Notes: generated from the sequence alone by a model not told the origin. Positions 13,411-31,400 are shown, counted from the first letter of the stretch. The stretch is 64,000 bases of DNA from Haliotis rubra (GCF_003918875.1 NW_025767401.1:434001-498000); one strand, 5' to 3'. Numbers and translations are program-made.

Positions 13411-16400
13411 CTAAGTTGAGTCAATATTGTCCATCACATAGGCAAGATGATTGGAAATTATGTTATTTAAGTCTTTAGATATACTCATTAAAACTCGAAA
13501 ATTTTCTTTATCATTAAGCACACCTGATGGCATTGCCATGAAATCTGTGATTGATTTATGCACCTGGCTGATTTTCTGAAACAGAACTTGACTGAGAGGA
13601 ATCTTGAGCACTTTACACAGCTCTGTGAAGTTGGACAACCAGTTGAAGTATTCCTGGCTGGCAAAGTCAGGGTCCTTTACATAATCCACACCATCTGTGG
13701 TGTCAGCCGAGAGAGTCGCTGCAGCCATGTCTTGCTCGCTCATCCCTGCAGCAGCAACATTAGATGGTCTGTTGTCTAACTGGACAATACTAGTTTCCAG
13801 CTGATTATCTGCTGTTTGATATTGAATCTCGTATATCTGCTGTTCATCATTACCCTCGGCCAACTCCTGTATAATTTGGTAAGCAGCCTCCACTGGAAGC
13901 GCTCCGTTGTCTCCCTTCCCATCCTCCTGTACTTCAGCAATGGCAATAACAGTCTTCTCAACATTCCCATTTTCTGACTGAATCAATGGCAAGTCACTGA
14001 GAGGGATCTCTATTTGGTTCTGTTCATTCTGAGGGCCAATTTCTGTCTCAGTTTCTAACTGGTCCTTGTCTCCTCCACCCTGATTGGATGGAGAAGCAAT
14101 TTCAACTTCCTGCACAACGAATCCTGTGTTGAGATTCTGAATGAGACTGACAATCTTCCTCTGATTGGCCAGAGCTTCCACATCAATCTCTCCTGAAGAT
14201 TTCTTTTGAGTCCCTGGCATCATGATGTTGACAACGGTGGTGTCGGACGGGTCAAGCATGGGCTGACCACCTGCCATGGTGACCTGCTCGCCCTGTTTCA
14301 ACTGGCCACCATGCCATCTAGACATGTGCACTCTTATCTGATTCTGTCTCTTGAATTTCTCTCCACAGAGAGAACACTCAAAGGGCTTTGTGCTCATGTG
14401 TTCACGGAAATGTCTACGCCTACTTGACGGATCACTGAATTTGGCAGAGCACACTTCACATTCATAGGGCTTCACTCCTGAAACACACACGACATCAACT
14501 TAAATCTTTCTTTGTTAGTTTAATGTTTAATGTGAGGCCATTCAACTTAACTGAACTTATGAGTAACTTATCTGGCCATTTTACCTTTGAAGAAAATTGG
14601 TGAGTACATTTAATCACATTTTTATGATGACTCTACATATAATAACAAAACAATACTGACCTGTATGTATGATCTTGTGTCTGGCCAGATCTGACTGATG
14701 AGCAAACGCTTTGGAACACTTGTCACACTGGAATGGCCGTTCACCTAAGAACACATAACACCCATATGTAATTGCAAAACATCCTGAAACAACAGCTGCA
14801 GAGCCTCTGGTAGTGTTAACAGCTGAGTTTTTCCTCATACCCAATTCATGTTACTGGCTGACAGTTGAACACTGGACGGGTATACATATATATATAACAC
14901 TAAGCTAGTCTGTCCCAAGCCAAACAAAAGTCTCACAATATATGTCGCTGCCACCCACCGATTCAGAGGGCTTCCCACCTGAAACATTACTGACATAAGG
15001 CACCTACAACCTCTTAAGGTACCGTATATGACCGTCTATAAGCCGAATTTTGAGGACCAAAAAAAGCAGTCTGTAGAAGGGGGTCGTCTTATCCATGGGT
15101 TACGCTTTCGTCAAACTTAAGAAAACAACATCGTATCACTTTGCGTGAACAAACAACAGAAGACAACTTTGTCAGTAGAGACGTAAGCAAGAACTTAGAA
15201 CTGTCCAACCCTGTTAGAACCAGATGAAGATTCCAATGAGGATAGGTAATGATTTAAAAGTTGCAAGCAATATTCCCTCAGTATCACAGGACTGGCATTG
15301 ACAGCCCTAGCATGCTATGAATTGAACCCTGATCTTCAGCACCATAGGCCACCACTCTCACCACTCAGCTACCCCACTTCCTGATATAGTTGGTGGTGTT
15401 CCTGATAGAAGATCCGGGTTAGAATTGGTCTTCAGCACCCCATGCATGTCGTAAGAGGCGACAATCAGGATCAGGTTGTCAGACATGCTGACTTGGTTGA
15501 CACATGTCATCGTATCCCAATTGTGTGGATCAATGATCATGTTGATCGCTGGATGGTCCAGACTCGATTATTCACAGACTGGTGCCATGTAGCTGGACTG
15601 TTGCCAAGTGTGGCATTAAACAACAAACAAACAATGATCTAGTTAGGCTATCTGTGCCCTTCATCACCTGTGTGCATCTTCATGTGCGACCTGAGGTACA
15701 CCATCTGTGAGAAGCGGCGGGAACATATCTGGCAGGCAAACGGTGTGTTGTTGGTGTGGGTGATGAGGTGGCGTCGGAAGCAGCTGACTTGTCGGAAGGA
15801 TCTGTTGCACACCTCACACATGTAGGGCTTGGTGTTGCTGTGTATTGTCATGTGTTCCTTCAGGGTCACACTGCTGGAGAACTTCTTACTGCAATCTGCG
15901 CATTCGAACGGCTTGATGCCTGACAACACAAGACACTTAGGTCATCCAGTTATGTCTGCACTACATTTTGAAACAGTGTCAGTGAAATTATCAAATAAAA
16001 TCCTTCAAGTCATTCAAGCCAGACAAAAACAAAATTATGGTTGCAAGGAGTCAAAGGTATTTATCATAATATAATGTGTGCATAATACGCTAGACAATTG
16101 ATGATGACAGCAAATATGCAACTTATCATTTCCATGATTTGGAAACAAAACTATTTAAAAATTGAAAATTTTAACTATAAATTGTATATTTATATACTTA
16201 TCCTATCTCACGACTTGCACCTCTCTCTCTTCATTCGGCCATGAGTGGAAACGAATTAAAACTTTGCTCAAGACCTACCTTGTCCCTCTCCCCGTGCTGT
16301 GCATGCCTTCCTGTCTCAGTCGTGCTCACTAGTCCATGACAACACGAGGCATGCGCAGTCCTCACCCATGTGATCACCTCACATACTCATTCTCGATCTT

Positions 16401-19400
16401 GGAGTCATAATAGGACAAAACCGGAACGGTGGTAATCTATGTAGTGGGGAGGTAGGGAGGGACTTTATCGCTCAGCGTGAGATAGGATAAGTATATAAAT
16501 ATACAATTTATAGTTAAAATTTTCAAATTTTAAACTTATCCTATCTCACGACTTGCACTTATCCCACGGTAGGAAGGTGGGTCATAGATTACCGAAATTC
16601 AAGCGATAACAGCTAAGTGTTATGCCCAAACAACCGTGGGAAGCAACTACAAGGTAGGCCAATAACTACCAAGTTACTACGTCGCGAGGGTTAGTTCGAA
16701 CCCATTGACTTACAAAGCACAATTGCTCCCAGGGACCGAGATTCCTGAGCAATGTGGTGTTCAGTCACTACCTTCACAAAGTGAAAAGACGTAGCTTAAC
16801 GAGTGTAAGCAGTCGTATCGCCACGATTTCCAAGGTACCCCGTAATAAAGTCTAACGACTAGTATCGGGCAAGCCCCCCTGCTTGAAACAACCCCTACAG
16901 ACACTGTCCCGAGGAGGGTGAAAGAGAAATTGAATCGGTAAAACTCACAATTTTAATGTTCAGTACCACAACATCATCTTATGACTTCCACTACTTACCA
17001 CAGTAAGATCACATAGATGTGTATAGGCACTTAGGAGCATGAACGCTACGAAGTGTAACACTTCGGGAAGGACTCACTTCACTGACTTAATTACTCCGTG
17101 GAGCAGAGGACAGTAAGTGAGGTGGCGACTCTCTGTAGTCTCAAACAAATGAGAGGAGAAATCTAAATCCCGGAAGAAATAAAGACGTAAATCAGAAAAA
17201 GTTGTTCAGATTTATTCAGATTGTACACAAGCAGAAACGATCGCGAATTGGGATCAACTGCACAGTGGGATCCATATAGCATCGGAGCACAAGGAAGTTC
17301 ATTATCTGCGATGTTGTGCCGCTGATAACTGCTGGGCAAGGACGAGTGGTCCAAACTGATGAAGGCCTTGAATATCCATCACCGACACATCTCTGAGGTA
17401 ATGAGACGAAAAGACCGTGTCAGATCGCCAAAAACAACCCTCCATTATGGCAGTTAACGAGCAGTTGCTATGCAACGCCATAGTAGAAGCAAATGCCCTG
17501 GTTTCATGAGGGTTGACTGCCGTAGGTGGTGGCAAACCGGCAAAAGTGTAGGCTTGAGTATTGTAGCTCGTAGCCAATATGAGAGTGTTGTGCGAGAGAC
17601 TTCCGCCTTGGAAGTAGTAGACAAGGGTATAAATAGTCTCTTACGCAGACGGCGGCGCTCTTGCGATGCTTTAAGGTAAATGCGAAGTGCTCTGACTGGA
17701 CAAAGAGACAGATCTTCGACATCTGCTGGACCCAATATGGTAGACAAAGGCGGGATTTTAAAAAGACGATCAGGTTGACCCGGCAACTGGTTCTTTGCGA
17801 CAAAATCCCAGCGCAATCCCAAAATTACCTTGCCATGTCTACTCTCTTCAAAACGGACACGGTTGACATCTAGAGCATGCAGTTCTGATATACGTGCCGC
17901 TGTGGCCAAGGCAATAAGAAAAAAGGTCTTGAATGAAACCTGTTCAAATTCCTTGTCCTGTAAGGGTTCATAATGCTCTGACACTAAGTGGCGCAGGACC
18001 ATGGATAAGTCCCAAGCTGGTGGACGAAATTTCCTGGATTGGTCGGCTAGCTTAAAAGAACGAAGCAAGTACTGCAGTTCCGGTACTGTCGAAACCTTCG
18101 TACCAGAAGTCGTGGCTAGGACCGAATTAAGAGCCGCCAAGTAGGTGGCTAAAGTGGAACCCTTGAGTTTCCTTGTAGCCCGCAAATGTTGTAAAAATTC
18201 CGCAACAACCTGGGGCTTCAAGCAGTAGTAGGGGAAGCGATCCTCTGACCCGACAATAACATTCAAATTTCTTCCACTTATCGTCATACAAAGAGCGTGT
18301 AGACGCATGCGATGAGCTGCAGTGATAGCTGAGGCCACTCTGTGAGAATAACCCTTGGCTATTAGTGATTTCTGCAAATGTGCCATACGTGAAGATTGAA
18401 TGTCTGTGGTGACTCGCGGGATACACGTCCGAAGTCGCGGATGAACTAGTAGGTGGCCAAAATCCCGCAGTTGTACTTTGTTGGTTAACGGAAGAGACCT
18501 TGTGAATGCTGCTTAAGCGACTGGGAATGAGACTTTTGGGCCCGGCGAGTTGAACCAACTTCGCTGGCCAAAATGGCTTCACCAAAAGCAGTTGTACTTT
18601 GTTGGTTAACAGAATTTTCTGAATGACCTTGTGAAGTAGAGCCGGAGGTGGAAGACGCGATAAGCTGCTTGAGACCTTCCCAGGGAATGGCCAAAATGGC
18701 CAAAAGCAGTCGTGATCCCAAGCTAGTGGATCTGGAATTGGAGATGGATCTGGAATCTCGGCAGTTGGGAGTTGAACCGAGTGGCAAACAGGTTGACACT
18801 TTCGGTGGAGAGATCGGGTAAATTATCGTCCGAAAAATCTTGGGCAGGAGTTGCCACTCTGTGGGCGACGGGCGACTGGAACGAGACAGAGCGTCGGCAA
18901 TCACGTTCTTTGTTCCGGGAACATGCCTGGCTCTTGCGACGATGTTGAGAGAATCTATCAGAAGATAGAAACGAAACGTCCACTGTAGGAGTGCTGCTGA
19001 ACCCGTCGACCCTAGGTGATGGATGTACCACACTACCGTCGAGTTGTCGGACTGTATCAGCAGGTGAGACATCTTGAGTAGAACCGCCCAGTGCTGAATC
19101 GCCAGTAATACTTGAACTCCAGAATGTTTATGTGGAGTGACTTGTCTTCGGACGACCACTGCCCTGCCACTTGATGCTGAAGGAAGTGGGCTCCCCAACC
19201 TTCTAGAGAAGCGTCCACAAACAACTGATGGGTTGGACTGAAGGGCACCAAAGAGACGCCGGCGCAAACATTCTGTACATTGAGCCACCAACGCAGAATT
19301 GGACGTAGTTCCCTGGGTAACCGAATCAACACCTGAGGGTTGTTGGTTTGAAGATGAGGGCGCAGAAATATCTGAAGTGGGCGAAGCTGCAGTTGGCCTC

Positions 19401-22400
19401 TGTAAGTCAGAGCCTGAGCTGACGTTAAGATGCCCAGCAACTCCTGCCACTGGCGTAGAGTTCTGGGGTGATCCAAGGCTAGCGGAACCAGACGCTGAAT
19501 TTTGGTCCACCTGTCCTGGGGAACAAACAACTTGGCTTGTTCTGTGTCGAAGATTGCTCCTATGAACTGAAGTCTGCGAGTTGGTGTTAACTCCGACTTC
19601 TCGTAATTGAGGAGCCACCCTAACTGTTTGAGCAGCCTGATGGTGAACTCCCGATGGATTTGAAGAACGATTGGATCCTGTTGTGCCTGAATACAATCGT
19701 CGATATAGCTTTCGAAGGTCACTCCCGAGAATGTAGGAAACTACTGATGGGTTTGGTCACCCGAGTAAAAAGCCACGGGGCCGTAGAGATTCCAAATGGA
19801 AGGACGTTCCATTGGAAGTGATGGCCCCTGAAGGTGAACCTTAGATATTTCCGATGATCTGGGTGAATCGGAATGTGCAGGTATGCGTCTTGAAGATCAA
19901 GGGATATGAGGAAATCCCTTTTCTTCAGAATTGAGCGGAGAAGACTGGCTGATACCATGCGAAAATGAGGTGGTTGTTGCAGGAATCGAGCGTTGAATGT
20001 CTTCATATTGAAGATGAGACGCAACTTGCTGGAGTTTTTCTTTGGCACCAGAAAGATCGGGGAGTAAAATCCTGGAGTTATGCACACCTGATCTAGGTGT
20101 TCTATCGCATGTTTCTCCAGTAGAGTTTGGATTGTAGTCGAAAGGACTGCAGCCCGATCCAGAGGATATATTTGCTGCAAGGGTTGAATGGTGAGGGGTG
20201 GATCCCCGACCACAGGCAGTCGATAGCCGTGAATGAGAGTCATTGTGACAAATGGATCTCCCAGAAACTCCCAGTTGGGAGCAAACAGACCTAACCTCCC
20301 CCCTACAGGGGAATCGAACACTGGAACCACCGGATCCGGCAGAACCAATTCGAGCTCTGACTTCCTTGAGTCACTGTTTGGACAGTCTATGTCCAGTTCC
20401 AGTGTCGGGTCGATAGGGGCGACGTGATGCGGAACCACGAAATGGCCTCCTGCCTCTGCCACGTGCTTGAGAAGGCGCCATGCCTTTCATACAGTCCCGG
20501 AGGTCTGGGTTAGAAGGGGTAAATTGTGCGGTTCGGCGATGCCGCATAGAATCTTGGAGCTGAATTTTTGGGAATTCCAAGAGATCGACAGATACATGAA
20601 ATTGGTTAAGACGGTCCACCTTGGATGCGACTTCTGCAATAGCCCCACTGAACACCGTATCCCCCGACCATGGTTGACGAAATAATTCAGCCTTGAATCT
20701 ATCTTCCCATGAGGAGAAATTCAACGGACCCCGTCGCCGTATTGCAAGTAAATAGCCAAAAGAATGAGACAATTGCTCGAAGACCACCTGGAATTGGTCT
20801 AGAATCAGAGTCATACTACCCCTGATGAATGCGTCCTGGTCCGTATATGCATGATTGACAGCCTCCGCCACAGCGTCAACAGCTGAAATAATGCAGCTAA
20901 TGGCAGGGATAGCATGGCGAACCGTAGTATCTAAGTGAGCCAATTCCCTGTCTTCCACCAAATACTTCGAAATGGAACGCTTGCCACAGACCATGGAAAT
21001 GTCATCATCGACTGAAGGTGCCGCTGACCAAAGTTTCACACCATGAGTATGTGCCGTCGATGGTCGGAACCTTGGAGCAGACAAACCATCCTTCGTCCTT
21101 CTAAGCTTGTTGAAAGCCGCGTCAAGAGAAGAAGGCAATTGTTGAAGACATGGACGCAAAGGAAGTGTGATACTGGCAACATCTCTATTAGTCATGGCAT
21201 AAGACGTGGCCAAATCATCTGGAGATTTACTAAGAGGCACGTGAGCCGGTTCAACAACATCAAAACTGCCATCAGGAGTGGAGATGTCTGACTGCCCAGG
21301 TGAAGGGAAAGTAGTCTGAGATCGAGTCCGATCCTTCAAATCCCCAGAATGATTATTGCTAAGTACGCCAGACGATTGTTGAACATGTGAGGACGAGCGA
21401 CACTGATTCCAAGCCGACGTAACGGCACGAAGCATGGTATCTAAATCCGGCGCTGGAGAGGAATCAATAGCAGGATTCCAAGACTTAGCAATAATCTGTG
21501 ACCGCGGCAAAGTAGAAGTGGAATGGCGTGAAGGTGAACGCTGATCCACTGAAGCGTAACGCTGCCTAGCAGGTGAAACCAACCGTACAGAACGGCGTTG
21601 CTGATGTGTACTATCATGTAAAGGTACTGACCGTAAGACGTTACTAGCACTAGGCTGGCTAGAGGGGATATTCTGATTCACCTGAGGTGAATGAGACCGA
21701 CTTCTATTATCCCTCTGACACCAAGCGGTTAGGTGAACCGGATGGAAATGGCGAACTCATTTTAGGATGTTGTGGTGAGCCGGCTCGGCCGTGTGAGCCG
21801 GTTCGGCCTGGTGAGCCGGTTCGGCCTGGTGAGCCGGCTCGGCTGTGTGAGCCGGTTCGGCAGGGTGAGCCGGTTCGGCTGTGTGAGCCGGCTTGGCCAT
21901 GTGAGACGGTTCAGCAGGGTGAGCCGGTTCGGCAGGGTGAGCCGGCTCGGCGGGGTGAGCCGGCTCGGGAAAGTGAACAACACCTCGAACGACTCCTCCC
22001 AGCCGTGGAAATAGGAGAGCGGGTACGTTCCAACCGTGTCGATCCCCGCTTCGAATGCTTAGAAGTTCTCGAAATCTGTGATCGTTCCGAAGAAGCAGAC
22101 CTACGAGATAATGTAGATCGCAGGTCTGGCGTAGAAGAAATATCGGTCATTACCACCCTGGTACGCTCATGAGAACTTAAATTGGGTGAGGGAAGCTCCC
22201 CTAAAAGCCTTCTAACGTTCTCAGATAAATAGGAATCCGACGAAGCGTCCATAAAATCTTCGTCAGGCGAGACGGGCGATTGAGAACGGTGAGCAGTGAG
22301 GGTGGGGCGATCTAAGCATTGTTTCTTAGCGGGAAATGGACCAGACCCCGCAGAATTAGTCCTAGCCCTATCTGCCAAACGTCTGGCACAAGCACGTTTG

Positions 22401-25400
22401 TAAGATTTAAACGCCTCATTAGACAGACCTGAACACTTCGGACAGCGTGTGTCCCAGTCACAAACACCCACACAATCAACACACGATGTGTGTGGGTCCC
22501 ATGCTGAAAATACTTTATTACAACGGGCGCAAAACTTCCGTTTACTGGCCTGAACAGGCTTAACCATTTTGAGCAAATCTCAGACGAAAAAATTTTCACG
22601 TCCACTCAGTGGAGCCGACAAGAAAATTGATATGTGAGGTGATCACTATCCTGACTCATGCCTATTATGTCATGGACTTGAGCACAACTGAGACAGGAAG
22701 GCATGCACAGCACGGGAGAGGGACAAGGTAGGTCTTGAGCAAAGTTTTAATTCTTTCCACTCATGGTTGAGAGAGGTGCAGAGTTGAGATAGGAAAGTTT
22801 AAAATTTTAATTTTCTGAGTAAAATCATACTTATCCTGACTCATGTTTTATTGCTTGTTGCTTCCTCCCGTTAGTGGAACACTTGTATCTCCTTTTGGCG
22901 GGAAAAGCAGAGATGTAAAATCTCTACCACCACGAAGTTGTCTCCCTCTCCGTTTTGGCACTCTCCGTCTTCGAATTCACTCTCTCTTGCAAGCTCGACA
23001 CTTAGATTTGCTGGGAAATCCAAAGTGCCTAGCGGGGAGGTTGGGAGGGCTTACCTCATGAGTCAGGATAAGTATAAAATATCAATTTTACTCAGAAAAT
23101 TACATATTTTTCCTTATCCTGACTCATGTATTATTGCTTGTAGAATCCGACGGATTTGGTGGTGGGTCAAGCCACTTCTGGATTCCAATTTGGTGATTTA
23201 CGTCTTGCATACCCCCCTATGGGAACTTCCTGGTAGCACTTCAATTTACTGCTAGGCTCTGCTGCTGCTGTAACCCTTTACTTCCAGCTTTCTCTGATGG
23301 GGGGACCACAATTGTTAACTTTTGGTCCTTGCTTCTGTTAACATTTTTATGTGGATTTTAGCAACTCCATCTCTTGATGCAAGCATCAAGTGGAGAAGCG
23401 ACCCTTCTTATGTACGAGTACGTCCTTACAAGTACTGGGTCTTATCACTTATGCTAGTCTGTCTTAGACGTGCATATGGACTCTAAAGCTGTAACTCTCC
23501 TGAGTGTAGGCTTTTGCAAGTCATGTGATAAAAGGGCGAGACTCTGTCTCAGCGCCTCTGTGGAACTGTCAATTGTTGTGCTACAACAAGTGGGCCGAAA
23601 TGGTGAATGCCAGAGACGTCCTCGGTGGCGATGTCTCTCAGGTAGTGGTTGGCAAACACCATGTCCAATTTCCAGAAGCAGCCCTCCATTATCGTCGTGA
23701 TAGAGCAGTTTCCATGTAGAGCGAGTGTTGACGCCAGAGCTCTAATTTCATGTGGATTGGAGGCTCTTGGAGGATCAAGTCCTGCTGCTTTGTAGGCCCG
23801 TAGAATGACAGTTCTCATCCATATTGATATCGTAGTGCGAGAGATCTCAGTCTGTGTCTCTGCCGATATAGGGATGAAAAGACGCTTGAATTTTCGTCTC
23901 CTGGTCCTAGACCTTTGTAGGTAGACTTTCAATGCTCTTACTGGGCACAAGGATAGGTCCTGTGTATCCTGTGGCCCAAGGACTGATGATAGTGCTGGGA
24001 TGTGGAATTGTCTGTCCGGTTGACCTGGCAGTTGATTCTTTGCTATAAAGTCCCATCTCAGTCCCATATGCACGATGTTTCGATTTTCATCAAATCGTGT
24101 CCTTTCAAAGTCTAGAGCATGTATTTCCGACATCCTTGCTGCTGTTGCTAAGGCAATCAGGAATAGAATTTTCTGTGTCAAGAACTCAAAAGATGTCCTA
24201 TCTAATGGTTCATAAGCGTCACTGGTGAGATGCCGTAGAACTATGTTGAGGTCCCAAGCCGGAGCTTTAAATCTCTGTTGTTGGTCCTCCAGTTTAAAAG
24301 AGCGTAGTAAGGCCAGTAACTCTGGTACCTTAGTCAGTTTTACACTCGTCCTCATAGTGATAACTGAGCTCAATGCCGCTAGGTATGTTGAGAGTGTTGA
24401 CCCTTTTAACCGCTTCGTTTGTCTTAGGTGACAAAGATAGTCCGCCACTTGAGGGTGTGTCGCTTTCATGGCTGTGAAGCCTGTTTTCAAAGCGTAGGTC
24501 TCGAAGCTTCGCCACTTGTCGTCGTACAAGTTGCGTGTTGACTTGCGTAAAGCTAGTGTGACCGCTTTAGCTGCCCTGGCGGAATATCCTCTCTTATTCA
24601 AGCACGCCTTGATACGTTCCGAGCGTGTAGGCGGAACACCTCGGGGTTGCTGTGTGCTTGCTTTGTGTGTGGATGTACTAGCAAGTTCGTCCACTCTGGT
24701 AGTTGCAGTTGAGGCGGTCCTAGTTCTTGTATGAGAATGGGGAACCATATTCTCGCTGGCCAGTAAGGCGCGATCAAAATCAGTTGCAGGTTCCTCGTCT
24801 GCATGATTTTCTGCAACACTTTCGGTATTAGAGCTGGTTGCGGGAACGCGTAAGCGTTTAGTCCTTCCCAAGAGATGCTTAGAGCATCTGTTGCCCATGC
24901 TCGTGGATCTGGTATTGGAGAGATGAATGTTACCAGTTGATTGTTTAATCTTGTGGCAAACAAGTCTATTAGTGGCGCTCCTATCTCTTGTGTAATCTGT
25001 TTGAAGATTTCTGGATGTAGCATCCATTCTGTTGGGGATGGCTGAGTTGGACGAGATAGTGCGTCTGCTATCACATTCTTGGCTCCTGGAATGTGGCATG
25101 CTTTTATGTGGATGTTCAGATTGTCTATTATGCTGAACAGATGAAAGCAAAGGTTCAGAAGGTTCGCCGACCTTGTTGATCCTTGTTTGTTTATGTAGAA
25201 CGCCACTGTGGAGTTGTCCGTGTGTACCGTTAGATGAGCATTCTTTAAAATGCTGGTCCAGTGGAGTATGGCATTTATCACTGCTTTCATTTCTAGCATG
25301 TTGATGTGCAGATCTTTCTCTTGTAATGTCCATTTCCCAGCTGACACTTCGTTGTCGAGGTGTGCTCCCCATCCTTGGAGAGATGCGTCCACATAGAGAT

Positions 25401-28400
25401 GCGTCTTGCACTCCGGCTCTGCTAAGTAGGTGCCTCCGCAAACATTCGATCTCTGAGTCCACCATAGTAGATATGGTTTTAGTCTGTCCGGGAGTCCGAA
25501 GGGGTCCGAATCACTAGGTGTGCATTTACAAAGACCTGTAGTGGGCGTAGTTGTAATCTCCATCTGCGCGTCATATCCTGTGCTGACGTGAGGAGACCCA
25601 ACAGACTCTGCCACTGTCGGAGTGGCCACGGAGAGAGTAGAGCTTGCGATACCATCTGTTGTATCTTTAGCCAACGGTCCTCTGGTACTGTTATGCGGTT
25701 TTCTGTTGTGATGAGCCGAATTCCTAGGAACTGCAGGTCCTGTGTAGGCTCTAGTTCCGACTTGAGGAGATTCACTAGCCACCCTAGTTGAGTGAGAAGC
25801 CTGATGGTAAAGTCCAGCTGTAGTCTGAGATGACTGGGATCTTGATGAGCCTGAATCCCATCGTCTAGGTAGAACGCACTGCGTAGACCTCGATGATGTA
25901 GGTATGTGACTATGGGCTTCGTCACTCTTGTAAACAACCAGGTGGCCGATGATATTCCAAATGGCAGGACTTTCCATTGGTAGTGTCGTCCGTCTAGTAG
26001 GAATCTGAGGTACTTCCTTGATTCCGGATGTATAGGAATGTGCAGGTGTGCGTCCTGTAAATCTATGCTGGCCATATGGTCCAACGGACGGACGAGATGT
26101 AGTAGTTGAGGCAAATGAATCATGTTGAACTTTGCTGGTTTGCGTAGATAATCTCTGTTGAATGTCCTCATGTTGTAAATTAGACGGAACTTTTCTTTGG
26201 AGTTTTTCTTTGGTACGAGGAAAACTGGGGAGTAGAATCCTGGTGAGATCTGGTCCTGATCTATCACCTCTATAGCGTCCTTCTCTAGTAGAGATGTGAC
26301 CGCTTCTTGCAGCCTCTCTGTCCGATGGGTTGCAAAGTTGAACCTCTGAGGTGCGTTTGTTAATGGAGGGACTGTTTGTAGTTGTATATGATATCCGTCT
26401 CTTAGGATGTTGGATACAAATTGATCTTGAAGAATTCCCCAGTTCTCCCAGTAGCGTTGTAGACGTCCACCCACTTGGGAAGGTTGAACAGGAACGGCTG
26501 GGGGTGGAAGACTCCAGTCGTTCCGAACCTGTCCTTCATCGTCTAAAGCCTCTGGCACCTCAAGATGGGCGACAAAAAGAATCCTTTCCTCCATTGGAGG
26601 TTCCCATTTTCTTTTCTCTTGCTTTCTGGATGCCTGCAAATTTAGATTTGCCAGAGTAGCGTTGGGACGTCTGCCTGATGACACTGGCTAGTGTATCAAT
26701 GGACTTAATCATCATGACTTCCTGGATTCCTTTGTGACTTCCTTGGCAACCTCGTCAATCTCCCCTGCGAAGATGGATGTTGTAGACCATGGAGCTCTGT
26801 ATAGAGTCTTAGTGAAGGTTCACTCCAGTTACATGAAGACAATAGTCCTTGTCTTCTGGCGAGCGTCAATGCTGCTGATATGGATGATAAATGCTCTGAA
26901 ATAAATTGGTGGTCCTTTTTCTGCGTTAGTAGGGCAGAATAAATCATCCGGTCTTCCTCTGCAGTAGAGTTCCTGAACTTGGAGATGAGCGTTTCATTAA
27001 TTGCCCTGGATCTGTTAAGTCCGAAGAACATCCTTCTGGTCATAGTGTCTATCTGTGCCAGCTTTTTGTCATCAATCTTGTAAGATTTGGTCCGGGAGTC
27101 GTTGATGATTTTATAGTTCTCATCTATTTCTTGTGCCTTCATAAAGGGATCCATGTTATGTAGTGAGAACTTCTTTGCGTTGAACTGTGGGATATTAGGA
27201 GACTGGAACTTAGTTGCCTTTCTGAAGGCTGCGTCCAGGTCCTCTGGTACGTCCGAGACCGGGTCAATTGGAGGTAGAGTGATAGTGTCCTTCATTAGGT
27301 ACGTAAATGCTTCATTCTCTTCCTTAGAGGGTGACGCTAGGTCCAGTCCATTAGCCTTCCAATATTTCATCTCTGAGTCCGAAAATATGATACCGCCATC
27401 GTCCTCTGTATCATGTCCACTGGTATATGATCGTTGAATATCCTTCGTGCATGGAGATCTGCGTGGCGATCTACGTGGCGATCTGTGTGGAGATGAGTAT
27501 GTTGAACTACATGTAGTTCTAAGAGGAGATCTGTATGGCGACCTGCATGGAGGTGAGCGTCTTCTAGGCCGGGATCGCCTTCCTGGCAATATATTTCTAA
27601 GTGGTGAATCCCGTGACGACCTGCGTGGTGTTGTTGATGCCCTTGAAGATAATTCAGACGACCTTCGCGCAGGTGAGAGGTTTTGTTGAGGGTCTGAGTC
27701 CCGAGACGTCTCTCTAAACCTTCTAGGAGGTGTAGGTTTCTTTCTTTGTGAAGTGGGTAGCCTGCGTGAAGGTTCTTCATTAGCCTCATCATCTGATGAC
27801 GATCTATTTGGTTCTGAAGAGCGTGCCCTCCTTCGCACAGGTTTGCTGACGTCATGTTGTGTAGGTCTGCTCTTAGTCCTAGAGCTAGATCCTCTGGTAG
27901 GCCTCTCAGATGTATCATCAGTGTGGGGTCCTTTGTGCAGCACTGGATCCTCTCTGAGGTTGATGACTTGGGCATGAGAGCCGCCTGGCTGTCCATCATG
28001 TAAGGTTCTTTCCTGCGTGAAGCGCTTCTCCATCATTTCCATCATTTGTTGAGAGAATTGCTGCATGAAGGCCCCGGGGGGTTGAATGTCTGCGACGACT
28101 GTAGTGATGTCGTATCTGAGAGGGTAGCGATATGGTCCAGGGATCGCTGTGCCTCATGGATCTCTGCTGTCAGTGTAGAAGGTAACTCGGACTGCGTAGA
28201 GAGGGTTGCTGACGTTACCGTTGCTGAGGCCTGTGTCCTTTTCTTATGCAGTATCTCTGGGATGATTAACAACGGCTCATCATATAAGCCTCTCTCTTCC
28301 ATCGGGACGATTTCAGCAGAAAAAGTCCTTGTAGTCTGTGAAGAACTCCCAGTAGAGCCAAACGGAGAGGGAGACAACTTGTGGTGAGTAGTGATTTTAC

Positions 28401-31400
28401 GTCTGCTTTTTTGAAGGGAGCTTCAAAAAAGGAGATACAAGTGTTCCACTAACGTTCGGGAAAGGAAGGAGACAAGCAATAATACATGAGTCAGGATAAG
28501 GAAAAATGTATATATCATTTCAAGAACCTTAATATTGGGTGTCAATTTTTGGACAGTTTTCATCAACACTGCAAAGCTTAATAGAACATACCCATATGAA
28601 CTAGTTTGTGCCGCCGGAGACTCTCATTGCTACGGTAACTCTTGCCACACCCTTCATAATCACATGCAAATGGCCTGGCTGTTGTGTGGGTCCACATGTG
28701 CACTTTCAGATTTCCTGGAAATAGAAAGCACTATGTATGTAAACAAGAACACATTATTAAACATCAATATTTTTATTTGAACACAGATAAGGAATGCTTA
28801 TGAAAGCAGCCCTGATCTTTGCTTTGGTTTCAGTCAAGTAAAAGTCATTGTCACCCTTGTAGTGCTTACCTTTCTGAGTGAAGGTCTTGCCACATCGAGG
28901 ACACTTGAAACCTGTAGAAGTTCGGATGATTCTCCCTAGAGCCTCAATACTGTCCTCTTTGACATCAGGCGCGCTGGAACAAAGACACATTCTTCTAAAC
29001 TTTGTGCATTATAGATACATGTAGATATAAAGTTTCAAGCACACAGAGAGGTAACCATGAAAATCTGACAATGACATAACCAGATTTAAAAGAAAACAAA
29101 TGAAAACCTTTTCAAAGCTGGACCCCTTCAAGAAAATGATACTTGAAAATGTCTTGAGAAAGAGTATCGAGGAATCCTTTCCTTTTATTCTATCCTGTAC
29201 ACTTGATTCCAGAAGAATTTACTAGGGGACCACATAAAAGAAATTCACGGAAGAATAATTTCTGATGTCGATAATCTTTGTGAAATAGTTATTTGAAAAC
29301 ACACCAGTGCCTGTCAAAATCTGAAAGCTGTCCCATTTCACAACACAGCAAAAACATTGATGTGTGGATGCAACTGGTGATGTTATGAAACAGCACTTGA
29401 ATGTAGTAATTCTTTTTCAGATATAAAACTACATTTGACCTGCATCTAATATGAATGACACTTTCACCTGAATTGAAGACAACACAAACCTACCTGGTGG
29501 AAGATCACTTGCAGTCTTCCTGGGCCTCCCTGCACAACAAAATGTTGGTCAGTAGGCATATCTGGCATGATATGGTCAAAAGTTCTTTTGACTATGTTAT
29601 GATACAAATACATTTTATATAAAAACATAATTCAAATGATACACATTTAACGTTTATGAGATTTTCTTTCACCATAAAAAACAAACAAAATGTTACCTAA
29701 AATATCATTCTTATGATTTCATGATATTTAATTATTTGGATGTGTCTAAAGTCTTTGGGAGTGAGTCATTTTTATTTTGTTTTTTGCATCCTACAGCATG
29801 GTGCCCTGTAACTATTGACTCCGAGTCCAGCAAGTGGTTGACTGCACGAGCATCAATCAGCCAGACCTGACATTGCAGCCTCCTTATCTTCCTGGAGGTC
29901 CTTTCACAAAGCACTAAGGTTATCGTAAGTCACTAAGGTAACCTTAGTGCAATGTTAAAGAATGGGAGTTAAGGTTAATCTTAGTAAAGGTTGCTTCTTG
30001 AAAGGAGTCCCTGGTCACAAAATATATCACTCATCTACCCTGACCTCCATGTAACCTGCATAGTACCACTGCCTCAAGCCAATATCGGTTTCCCCACATC
30101 TTAAAAAATCCATTCGAGATATTGCATGATTTTCATCTCTTTCAGTTTTGATGAGTCCACACATCCAGATAAATATCTGTGATGGATATGTTAAACTTTC
30201 ATTTAGAAAATATCCTAAAGCGCGAAACAATATTTCCTTTTGCATAGCTATCCTTTGTTTACACTGGCTGTATGGCTCCATGTGGTGTCACTGAAGCTCT
30301 ACAGAGAGCAAGCTATACAGTCGCTTTCATGTATAAATATTGAATATCATGCACTTCGCTGTCACAGTCATCGTAACATATCTATCATTATACAAAACAA
30401 CATTTAGAGCACATCCACAGGAATCTATATATTTCGGGTGAACGGACATTACCCCTTTTGCCTGTTGACTTTTTCTTGACTGGAACCAGCTCTGTTTCTG
30501 GATCAAAGTCAGAGTCATCTGTGTCCTCATCAATGTTGACAGGATTCTTGAAGTCTCTGCAAACACCAGAACCACCTACAGTGCGTGAGTTCAGTTTTAC
30601 ACTGCTTTTAGCTATATTCCAGCAATATCATGGCAGGGCACACCAGAAATAGGCTTCAGAATCATCTACAGAGTATGCAGATATCTCATGAGTAAGTGAA
30701 CATTCTTTTACAAATAATCAGCATTAATGCTTTACATCATAGCAACCTGCAAAAACAGCCCGTGTCTCTTTCCTCAGAGCAATCTTTGTGATAGGACACC
30801 CTTACCTTCCCTAAACAAAGACTTATGATATTATGATAGCCTTCGATGATTTTGTGGACCAGACAATTCAGTTCAAGATTATCTTAATTCAGATAAGACA
30901 CTAATCCATACCTGAACTTAGCTGGGATGATCCTCTGTCTAGCTGGCAGTTTACCTGACCTTCGTTCTATGTCATAGTCATTAGCCTGCACCCCAACCTC
31001 CATGAGGACACGGTAGCTATTTTGGGGGTCAGTTGGTAAAATTGTGACCTCATCTTCATCTTCTCTCTCAGTCAACAACTCCTCAATATCATGGGTCTCT
31101 TCACTAGTCAGCTCCATGGTCTCATGACACATGGTGGCTGAAGTCTCAGTACCAACCTCAGCTGTTTGGATGCAAGTGCTCTGAGTTGTCTCCCCTTCCA
31201 TGTGCTGCACCGGAGCAGCCTCTGAAATAGTTACATAATACACCTATGTACCTATTTAGGGGCATGACACAATGGGTATTGAACATTAGTATGAAAGATT
31301 CCTTTGTTACAATAATGATTAGACTAAGGCTGACACAAGGGAACAGACGGGACAGGCACAATACATGATAAACATGGTACAGAATAGTGGTGTTCCGATT

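What the first reader, a model, noticed from the sequence alone, without database searches (positions are those of the whole stretch)
16154..28510. Two different full-length DIRS families integrated head-to-tail at essentially the same base in one intron
Seen: element A ends ...aagtttaaaattt and element B begins taattttctgag at 22795-22819, with no host spacer. Each end matches its own ICR circle junction (A: aagtttaaaatttgaaaa; B: aatatgtaattttctgag). A is bounded by TTTAAAA on both sides (16154-16160 and 22798-22804), like a duplicated att core. The LTRs and gag differ between A and B, so this is not a tandem duplication. Without the elements the intron would be only ~320 bp. Established: DIRS integrate circular cDNA via a tyrosine recombinase without a classical TSD, and Dictyostelium DIRS-1 clusters in its own copies. 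Inference: there may be sequence-directed targeting shared across families, where one element's end or a fixed AT-rich site acts as the landing pad, or the two co-integrated as a hetero-dimeric circle. Either would be an integron-like stacking system for YR retroelements.
Basis: partly seen in the sequence, partly recalled or inferred. Interest (0 to 1): 0.78.

Follow-up and report, generated by a model that had tools for sequence, protein, structure and literature searches.

The report
Two DIRS retrotransposons stacked end-to-end
Two different DIRS-type jumping genes sit end to end in one intron because both cut into the same short A/T-rich core, and at least 19 such exact, same-direction stacks in this genome show that resident DIRS ends are favoured landing sites.

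Summary
Element A (16164-22804) and element B (22809-28507) are structurally complete DIRS1-like retrotransposons. Both code on the minus strand and they meet with no host spacer. They lie in a phase-1 intron of a C2H2 zinc-finger gene; without them the intron would be about 320 bp. They are different families: RT 54%, recombinase 54% and Gag 24% amino-acid identity. All three boundaries carry the same A4-5T core that sits at both families' circle junctions.

Genome-wide, single copies of both families sit in A-rich/T-rich host sites without target-site duplication. I found at least 19 base-exact end-to-end stacks: 15 B-like to B-like, 3 A to B-like including this one, and 1 B-like to A. All are head-to-tail; searches for head-to-head and tail-to-tail joins found none. 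In 11 of the 15 B-like stacks the partners belong to different subfamilies. A core-only model predicts 1.5-5.4 stacks.

A and B-like elements also insert repeatedly at junction-like sites inside other elements' termini and ICRs. Two of these cases have both reciprocal junctions.

This extends the known DIRS tyrosine-recombinase model and "homing". It is not an integron-like system. Co-integration of a hetero-dimeric circle is not excluded.

The parts
15648..15919 (-). Host gene, last coding exon (C2H2 zinc fingers, ends in a stop). The acceptor AG is at 15921-15920 on the minus strand.
   Evidence: Translation [13 protein letters not shown]...MHTGDEGHR*. Reading it as a zinc-finger linker rests on my knowledge of the C2H2 motif.
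16157..16163 (.). Core 1 (AAAAATT) at the host|A boundary. It could belong to either the host or the element.
   Evidence: The same A-run/T-run precedes this A terminus (G[G/A]AAATTTT) in nearly all of 17 full copies; only L039 is degenerate.
16164..16475 (-). Element A, terminal repeat next to the ICR (the 3' repeat in coding orientation). Its outer 59 nt pair with the ICR at 98%.
   Evidence: the repeat finder I1, I2, I4, I13. It is 93-94% identical to family copies.
16476..16563 (-). Element A internal complementary region (ICR). Its reverse complement gives the circle junction AAGTTTAAAATTTGAAAATTTT.
   Evidence: The same junction appears in the ICRs of 18 full copies.
17454..18386 (-). 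Element A tyrosine-recombinase ORF. The frame is lost after about residue 278, before the HxxR and Tyr motifs.
   Evidence: Weak Pfam Phage_integrase match. 54% identity to B's recombinase. Translation.
19719..20462 (-). Element A reverse-transcriptase fragment. The rest of pol (18485-19722) is split into several frames.
   Evidence: Pfam RVT_1, E = 2e-13. ORF list. 54% identity to B's RT.
20371..21681 (-). Element A gag-like ORF (436 aa).
   Evidence: 24% identity to B's Gag over 182 aa.
22615..22804 (-). Element A terminal repeat at the A|B join (the 5' repeat in coding orientation). It is decayed by several 1-9 nt deletions and carries a 14-nt B-type patch at 22647-22660.
   Evidence: Alignment with A's other repeat and six family copies.
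22801..22808 (.). Core 2 (AAAATTTT), the A|B junction with no host spacer.
   Evidence: Two other loci show the equivalent join AAGTTTAAAAAT|GTAATTTTCTGA with an A-type repeat upstream.
22809..23056 (-). Element B terminal repeat next to the ICR (3' in coding orientation). It is decayed by deletions of roughly 7-17 nt.
23057..23128 (-). Element B ICR. Its reverse complement gives the circle junction GGAAAAATATGTAATTTTCTGAG.
23549..25465 (-). Element B tyrosine-recombinase ORF (638 aa). It overlaps the RNase H ORF. The R, HxxR and Tyr motifs are in frame.
   Evidence: Pfam Phage_integrase plus SAM-like N-terminal domain, both below the curated cut-off. Translation shows [12 protein letters not shown] and NHYLRD. 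Assigning these motifs rests on my knowledge of the family.
24598..25977 (-). Element B RNase H ORF, in a different frame from RT.
   Evidence: Pfam RT_RNaseH, E = 1.6e-7. ORF list.
25479..26684 (-). Element B reverse-transcriptase ORF.
   Evidence: Pfam RVT_1, E = 3.7e-16, full-length match.
26705..28066 (-). Element B gag-like ORF (453 aa).
28360..28507 (-). Element B outer terminal repeat (5' in coding orientation). Its last 36 nt match the ICR half at 100%.
28502..28507 (.). Core 3 (AAAAAT) at the B|host boundary.
   Evidence: GGAAAAAT followed by A-rich flank in 8 of 10 randomly sampled B-like copies.
28592..28714 (-). Host gene, upstream C2H2 exon. The donor GT is at 28591-28590 on the minus strand. 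The exon start near 28714 is inferred from an AG plus a pyrimidine tract.
   Evidence: Translation ...[41 protein letters not shown].

Best explanation
A and B are two related but distinct DIRS1-like retrotransposons. Each was integrated by a tyrosine recombinase from a circular DNA intermediate into the same short, directional A4-5T core (ATT in coding orientation). That core lies at the centre of both families' circle junctions.

The recombination is conservative, so the core is regenerated at both new boundaries instead of being destroyed. A resident element's boundary therefore remains a target: it keeps the core plus one junction-like arm. A second element using that core lands exactly flush and in the same orientation.

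The inferred empty site is ...ACTATTTAAAAAT|GTATATATC.... The order of arrival cannot be read from the structure.

Shown: the anatomy, the shared core, the absence of target-site duplication, the reciprocal junctions, and the excess and strict co-orientation of stacks. Inferred: that the recombinase does the cutting, and that arm sequences of the resident element add to targeting beyond the core.
For: 1. Three boundaries in the window carry the same core.

2. Circle junctions read from ICRs:
- A: GTTTAAAAATTTG(G/A)AAA
- B-like: GGAAAAATATGTAATT

3. Single A copies:
- One flank ends ...A(A)ATT before G(G/A)AAATTTT in most of 17 full copies.
- At the other end, 39 of 51 unselected termini read AAAAAT, then T in 25 of 39.
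- There is no fixed-length duplication.

4. Single B-like copies: flanks read ...A(A/T)AT|GTAATTTTCTGA and GGAAAAAT|A....

5. Exact end-to-end stacks, lower bounds from exact patterns:
- A to B-like: 3, including the window.
- B-like to A: 1.
- B-like to B-like: 15 of 20 candidates checked have a genuine terminal repeat upstream.

6. Expected stacks: 1.45 if any AAAAT is equally good, 5.4 if AAAAAT is required. This gives P = 2.5e-15 and 4e-6.

7. Orientation: head-to-head 0 and tail-to-tail 0.

8. In 11 of 15 B-like stacks the partners carry different subfamily markers. The two ends of one element share that marker in three control elements and nearly so in a fourth.

9. At C1446 and C2522 a complete A sits about 20 nt inside a B-like terminus, at ...GAGTAAAAT|TGATATTTT. 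Both junctions were recovered and no base was gained or lost.

10. A or B-like elements also sit inside B-like ICRs, with about 10 loci at the same AAAAT|ATCAATTTT site.

11. B's recombinase keeps R, HxxR and Tyr in frame.

12. The published model, recombination between a 3-bp junction and an identical genomic triplet with ATT the commonest, fits (PMC3266345, PMC7192593).
Against: - No empty or single-occupancy allele was found in this assembly, so order and independence of the two insertions here are unproven.
- Against the most generous core model, the excess for A alone is small: 3 observed against 1.05 expected, P = 0.09. The strong statistics come mainly from B-like stacks.
- Copy numbers and core counts are estimates. 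Pattern counts were divided by motifs per element, and core density was extrapolated from 51.6 kb of this window.
- The exact crossover point is unresolved. ICRs mostly show three T where integrated ends mostly show two.
- Both inner repeats at this particular join are unusually decayed. Simple sequential insertion does not predict this.
- Recombinase activity and specificity are untested.
Confidence: 0.7

Rival explanations
1. Pure coincidence of target preference. Both families simply like AAAAT-type sites, and this intron's core was hit twice by chance. The resident element played no part beyond leaving the core intact.
For: - Most copies of both families are single insertions in ordinary A/T-rich host sites.
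- For A-to-B stacks alone the excess over an AAAATT-core model is not significant: 3 against 1.05, P = 0.09.
- The host site itself (TTTAAAAAT|GTA) resembles both junctions.
Against: - Across all families the stacks exceed even an AAAAAT-only model: at least 19 against 5.4, P = 4e-6, and the observed count is a lower bound.
- Junction-like sites inside termini and ICRs are hit repeatedly at the same base.
Confidence: 0.15
2. Co-integration of a hetero-dimeric circle. A and B circles, or their cDNAs by template switching, fused at their shared cores before one integration event.
For: - The end product would be identical to what is seen, including co-orientation and a hybrid junction.
- The 14-nt B-type patch inside A's inner repeat, and the decay of both inner repeats, could reflect aberrant cDNA or recombination between the two elements.
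Against: - A's recombinase and pol are broken while B's gag and recombinase ORFs are open, which hints at different histories.
- One B-like terminus abuts a visibly older, degenerate B-like end (L081). This argues for sequential arrival in at least that case.
- Insertions inside termini with both reciprocal junctions show that integration into a resident element does happen.
Confidence: 0.1
3. Assembly artefact. Two haplotypes or paralogous loci, each with one element, were merged at a shared AT-rich stretch.
For: No read-level evidence was available. The two repeats next to the join show many small deletions.
Against: - The window has no gap.
- The same type of join recurs at independent loci with different flanks and subfamilies.
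- Host exons on both sides splice in frame.
Confidence: 0.03
4. Two nearby independent insertions were later brought together by deletion of the host spacer.
For: The inner repeats carry several microdeletions, so the region has lost DNA.
Against: - Both elements keep their terminal bases up to the core, and the join has the form of a normal junction.
- A random deletion would rarely end exactly at both termini, and never repeatedly across at least 19 loci.
Confidence: 0.02

Closest known systems
DIRS1-like retrotransposons and the Cappello / Goodwin-Poulter integration model (PMC3266345, PMC7192593)
   Same: - Inverted terminal repeats.
- An ICR complementary to both ends.
- gag, RT/RNase H and an overlapping tyrosine-recombinase ORF.
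- No target-site duplication.
- A terminal ATT-type triplet shared with the target.
   Different: - The shared identity is usually longer than 3 bp (A4-5T, up to 7-9 bp).
- The same core serves two families whose recombinases are only 54% identical.
- The consequence, base-exact stacks of different families, is documented here. I did not find it in the papers I could read.
DIRS "homing": Dictyostelium DIRS-1 inserting into DIRS-1, centromeric clusters, DrDIRS1 in zebrafish, nototheniid hot spots (PMC7192593, PMC5941688, PMC6387122)
   Same: New copies land preferentially in or next to resident DIRS copies.
   Different: - Published evidence is at the level of clusters, fragments or FISH signals, and within one family.
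- Here the joins are mapped to the base, are strictly co-oriented and mostly join different subfamilies.
- Specific junction-like sites in termini and ICRs are identified.
Tandem integration or accretion of bacterial tyrosine-recombinase elements, e.g. Salmonella genomic island 1 tandem arrays (PMC2297512); tandem prophages and ICE accretion (my own knowledge)
   Same: After integration, attL and attR keep the core. A second circle recombines with one of them and gives a head-to-tail array with no spacer.
   Different: - The host is eukaryotic and the element is reverse-transcribed.
- Target specificity is loose rather than a unique att site.
- The partners are different families.
Integrons
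   Same: A tyrosine recombinase adds units one after another at a recombination site, all in one orientation.
   Different: - There is no fixed platform (attI, intI, Pc promoter), and no cassettes with attC.
- Each stacked unit brings its own recombinase gene.
- Stacking is a minority outcome.
Transposable-element tandem dimers formed by double insertion at one target site (PMC5932611)
   Same: Two insertions at the same site give a head-to-tail dimer.
   Different: - That work concerns other element classes, and I did not read the paper beyond its abstract.
- Here the mechanism is conservative site-specific recombination, and the partners are usually different families.

Membership tests
DIRS1-like retrotransposon (order DIRS) | Reverse transcriptase and RNase H domains | tested here: met
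   Pfam RVT_1 in A (E = 2e-13) and B (E = 4e-16); RT_RNaseH in B (E = 1.6e-7). A's RNase H region gave no Pfam match because its frames are broken.
DIRS1-like retrotransposon (order DIRS) | Tyrosine recombinase in place of a DDE integrase | tested here: met
   Phage_integrase and SAM-like domain matches, below Pfam's curated cut-off. R, HxxR and Tyr are in frame in B. A's recombinase is 54% identical to B's but frameshifted. phmmer found no PDB relative.
DIRS1-like retrotransposon (order DIRS) | Inverted terminal repeats | tested here: met
   A: 197 nt at 81%. B: 144 nt at 79%.
DIRS1-like retrotransposon (order DIRS) | Internal complementary region matching both termini and spelling the circle junction | tested here: met
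   A at 16476-16563, B at 23057-23128. The same holds in 18 further A copies.
DIRS1-like retrotransposon (order DIRS) | No target-site duplication; terminal triplet shared with the target | tested here: met
   17 full A copies and 10 B-like copies. Two insertions with both junctions and the uninterrupted target sequence known.
DIRS1-like retrotransposon (order DIRS) | Methyltransferase-like domain downstream of RNase H | tested here: inconclusive
   The Pfam scan of the relevant ORFs gave no methyltransferase match. No dedicated profile was available.
DIRS1-like retrotransposon (order DIRS) | Long overlap between the recombinase ORF and the pol ORF | tested here: met
   In B, 23549-25465 overlaps 24598-25977 by 868 nt.
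Integron-like stacking platform | A fixed recombination platform (one recombinase gene, one primary site, a promoter) that captures units lacking their own recombinase | tested here: not met
   Stacks occur at many unrelated loci. Each unit carries its own recombinase gene. Most copies are single insertions.
Site-specific att-type integration with a directional core | Strict co-orientation of stacked units and regeneration of the core at both boundaries | tested here: met
   19 of 19 exact stacks are head-to-tail. Inverted joins: 0 and 0. Reciprocal junctions share AAAATT(T)G.

The most novel reading that the evidence does not exclude
The boundaries, termini and ICRs of resident DIRS elements act as genuine attachment sites that recombinases of several DIRS families recognise, through both the core and an arm. 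DIRS arrays would then grow by cross-family accretion. This would be the base-level mechanism behind DIRS clustering in heterochromatin and centromere-like regions. Hybrid junctions such as the one at 22.8 kb would stay recombinase substrates, which could explain the repair scars and the B-type patch next to this join.
Probability: 0.4. Interest if true: 0.7.

Novelty: new variant of a known kind. Interest (0 to 1): 0.5.

Why it matters
The specificity of DIRS recombinases has not been tested experimentally (PMC7192593), and integration has been inferred mostly from element anatomy. This genome provides natural substrates:
- a mapped core;
- reciprocal junctions that show conservative recombination;
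- defined pseudo-attachment sites;
- cross-family stacks.

These make the model directly testable and offer a simple mechanism for why DIRS elements pile up together.

For the host gene, the two elements enlarged a roughly 320-bp intron about forty-fold, in sense orientation.

Tried and rejected
- **Empty allele.** A search of this assembly for left flank, 5-35 nt, then right flank, allowing 2 mismatches, found nothing. No other individual or species was available.
- **Full-length B-like copies.** I used 81-401 nt stretches instead.
- **A-to-A tandem pattern.** It was not discriminating. Two hits are ICRs with a flipped centre. Two are an ICR half joined to a full repeat. I count no A-to-A stack.
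- **False A-to-B hits.** Five of the 15 hits are B-like ICRs that happen to read AAGTTTAAAAT, and two more lack an A-type repeat upstream. All seven were excluded after BLAST and inspection.
- **The 4-of-29 figure from my first sample.** It was biased because the query included B sequence. The unbiased figure is 1 clear case in 51.
- **Listing of flanks next to A's ICR-side terminus.** It was swamped by unrelated repeats and was not tallied.
- **Dating by left/right repeat identity.** Rejected, because both inner repeats are locally decayed.
- **Rfam on 15-30 kb.** Nothing.
- **phmmer of B's recombinase against the PDB.** Nothing.
- **Literature.** Goodwin & Poulter 2001 and Poulter & Butler 2015 are not held, so I cannot rule out an earlier description of DIRS tandems there.
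- **Large protein searches and organism identification.** Not run, because the proteins' identities were already clear.


Full report
**Orientation.** All coordinates are on the window's plus strand. Both elements code on the minus strand. In coding orientation B is therefore upstream and A downstream, and each ICR lies near its element's 3' end. "Left" and "right" below mean window left and right.

**What is there.** The repeat and ORF scans and Pfam show two complete DIRS-type structures.
- Element A runs 16164-22804. It has terminal inverted repeats, an ICR at 16476-16563, a gag-like ORF, an RT fragment and a recombinase ORF.
- Element B runs 22809-28507. Its ICR is at 23057-23128, with gag at 26705-28066, RT at 25479-26684, RNase H at 24598-25977 and a 638-aa recombinase ORF at 23549-25465.
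- B's recombinase keeps the Arg, His-x-x-Arg and Tyr motifs in frame.
- A's recombinase loses its frame after about residue 278, and its pol is in pieces.
- A and B are different families: RT 54%, recombinase 54%, Gag 24% identity. Their repeats share only terminal motifs.

**The host.** The flanking sequence encodes C2H2 zinc fingers on the minus strand. The upstream exon ends ...RRHKLVHM, with a donor at 28591/28590. The last exon starts with (G)IKPFEC after an acceptor at 15921/15920.

**The junction.**
- The reverse complement of each ICR spells that element's circle junction: AAGTTTAAAATTTGAAAATTTT for A and GGAAAAATATGTAATTTTCTGAG for B.
- The genomic ends match these up to a short A-run/T-run.
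- The three boundaries read AAAAATT|GAAAATTTT (16157-), AAGTTTAAAA-TTTT-AATTTTCTGAG (22795-) and GGAAAAAT|GTATATATC (28500-).
- No host spacer lies between A and B.
- The inferred empty site is ...ACTATTTAAAAAT|GTATATATC....
The first copy is host flank plus core. The second is A's terminus.

**Family sizes and single insertions.**
- The genome is 1.38 Gb.
- A's terminal 22-mer occurs 853 times, once at a terminus and once in the ICR of each copy, so there are about 430 copies. A looser 14-mer suggests up to about 700 termini.
- The B-like repeat motif occurs 12,016 times, four per copy, so there are about 3,000 copies.
- Eighteen full A copies show the ICR junction GTTTAAAAATTTG(G/A)AAATTTT.
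- Their left flanks end ...A(A)ATT before G(G/A)AAATTTT.
- In 51 unselected right termini the sequence after AAGTTTAAAA is A in 43, then T in 39, then T in 25 of those 39.
- Ten randomly chosen B-like copies and about 85 further left termini read ...A(A/T)AT|GTAATTTTCTGA and GGAAAAAT|A....
- No fixed-length duplication appears.
- In coding orientation both families begin with ATT, the commonest terminal triplet of DIRS1-like elements (PMC3266345).
- Both families therefore recombine at the same directional A4-5T core, and target identity usually extends beyond three bases.

**Proof of conservative insertion at a junction-like site.**
- About 20 nt inside its terminus, the B-like element reads ...CTGAGTAAAAT|TGATATTTT. 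This resembles A's junction.
- At C1446 and C2522 a complete A (6.4-7.0 kb) sits exactly there.
- The left junction reads host, then ATGTAATTTTCTGA(G/A)TAAAATTG, then A's left end. The right junction reads A's right end, then (T)TGATATTTTATAC.
- No base is lost or gained, and AAAATT(T)G is present on both sides.
- The host flanks differ between the two loci, so these are independent events.
- Two more A-type elements sit at the same position of other B-like copies (C169, C2420).
- Two sit inside B-like ICRs (C2384, C2621).
- About ten loci show a B-like end joined at AAAAT|(T)ATCAATTTT inside another B-like ICR, and one more uses a neighbouring core.

**Exact end-to-end stacks.**
- The pattern for A's right end followed by a B-like repeat gave 15 hits. 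Five are B-like ICRs, and two more (C25, C2682) lack an A-type repeat upstream.
- Three are flush A-to-B joins: the window, C979 and C2489. The latter two read AAGTTTAAAAAT|GTAATTTTCTGA. The window differs from this by two substitutions.
- The opposite order, B-like right end directly followed by A's left end, occurs once (C2525).
- The pattern for a B-like junction followed by a true left repeat gave 36 hits. Of 20 checked, 15 have a true right repeat upstream and so are flush B-like-to-B-like stacks. Two have ICR context and three have other contexts.
- A short marker after CATG is shared by the two ends of one element in three control elements and nearly so in a fourth. It differs between the partners in 11 of the 15 stacks. 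Most stacks therefore join different subfamilies and are not dimers of one element.
- One contig (C746) carries two such joins 7.1 kb apart, which makes a three-element array.
- Searches for tail-to-tail and head-to-head joins returned nothing.

**Statistics.**
- Nine A ends lie within 40 nt of a B-like motif, where random placement predicts 0.095 (P = 1.5e-15).
- The harder test assumes that every AAAAT in the genome is an equally good target. That is about 9.4 million sites, extrapolated from 51.6 kb of host sequence in this window. It predicts about 1.45 flush stacks among about 3,700 elements. Requiring AAAAAT predicts 5.4.
- The observed count is at least 19 (P = 2.5e-15 and 4e-6).
- The observed count is a lower bound, because the patterns needed exact matches.
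- For A alone the excess is modest: 3 against 0.22-1.05.
- If orientation were random, 19 of 19 co-oriented stacks would have P about 2e-6.
- Stacks remain a minority. One clear case occurred among 51 unselected A termini and one among about 85 B-like termini.

**Interpretation.**
- The data fit the published DIRS model: circular DNA recombines with a target sharing the junction triplet and leaves no duplication (PMC3266345, PMC7192593).
- The data extend that model in three ways. The core is longer and directional. It is shared by families with only 54% identical recombinases. Because it is regenerated at both boundaries, resident elements remain targets and are in fact preferred ones.
- Accretion of bacterial genomic islands and prophages at attL or attR follows the same logic (PMC2297512). 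This is also a base-level form of the DIRS "homing" described for Dictyostelium and fish (PMC7192593, PMC5941688).
- It is not integron-like. There is no platform, every unit has its own recombinase gene, and stacking is uncommon.
- Whether A or B came first, or whether a hetero-dimeric circle integrated once, cannot be decided from structure.

**Unexplained at this locus.**
- Both repeats next to the join are much more decayed than the outer ones. A's inner repeat has several deletions of 1-9 nt. B's has deletions of roughly 7-17 nt.
- A's outer repeat is 93-94% identical to family copies, and B's outer end matches its ICR half at 100%.
- A's inner repeat also holds a 14-nt B-type string, TATCCTGACTCATG, at 22647-22660, where six other A copies read differently.
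- Other stacks that I inspected do not show such decay.
- Repeated cutting of the hybrid junction followed by repair, local conversion, or an aberrant hetero-dimeric cDNA are all possible. None was tested.
- ICRs mostly carry three T at the junction while integrated left ends mostly carry two. The precise crossover point therefore stays open.

**Limits.**
- There are no reads, no second genome and no experiment.
- Copy numbers and core densities are estimates.
- Two key reviews could not be read.
Only short terminal motifs are quoted.

Noticed in passing
window 22647-22660: A's inner terminal repeat contains the 14-nt B-type repeat motif TATCCTGACTCATG, followed by a TATTAT-like stretch. Six other A copies have a different 20-nt sequence at this position. 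It looks like a short conversion or template-switch patch from B.
   Followed up: partly
window 22615-23056: Both terminal repeats flanking the A|B join carry many small deletions (1-9 nt in A's, roughly 7-17 nt in B's), while the two outer repeats are well preserved. Other stacks inspected do not show this.
   Followed up: partly
window 21739-21994: An 18-nt minisatellite (about 14 copies of a GTGAGCCGGTTCGGC-type unit) lies near the 5' end of element A. Another A copy (L055) shows repeated matches in the same region.
   Followed up: no
L090 (G000:C315:181050-181420) and L092 (G000:C2123:2779400-2779770): A-family ICRs whose central ~45 nt, between the inverted GGATAAG...CTTATCC arms, is flipped relative to the normal ICR. 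This may be recombinase-mediated inversion.
   Followed up: no
L089 (G000:C44:63400-63750) and L091 (G000:C1879:836810-837180): An A-family ICR half with its internal flank is joined at the junction to a full terminal repeat in the opposite sense. This is either an A inserted into an A ICR or an inversion between the circle junction and the ICR.
   Followed up: no
G000:C746:1163524 and 1170637: Two flush B-like-to-B-like joins lie 7.1 kb apart on one strand, a three-element head-to-tail array with different upstream partners.
   Followed up: no
G000:C1:10964642-11048765: A dense cluster of B-like DIRS copies sits at the end of an 11.2-Mb contig. Part of it has an ~8.8-kb period, possibly pericentromeric or subtelomeric.
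   Followed up: no
Stacks at G000:C424, C580, C1469, C1446:1971489, C69:2092149: One B-like subfamily (marker ATCTTTT or ATCTCTT after CATG) is the downstream partner in 5 of the 15 B-like stacks, with three different upstream partner types. It may be especially prone to landing on DIRS ends.
   Followed up: no
L063 (G000:C2682:350361-353416): The host flank of this B-like copy reads AAGTTTAAAAAT, 12 nt identical to A's terminus, but no A repeat lies upstream. This is either target mimicry or the remnant of a lost A.
   Followed up: partly
L081 (G000:C1:6594530-6594665): A B-like terminus abuts a degenerate, evidently older B-like right end. It is a stack whose partners have clearly different ages.
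   Followed up: partly
window 15648-15919 and 28592-28714: The host is a multi-finger C2H2 zinc-finger gene. Both DIRS lie in sense orientation in a phase-1 intron that splits a finger linker, and they enlarge it about forty-fold.
   Followed up: partly
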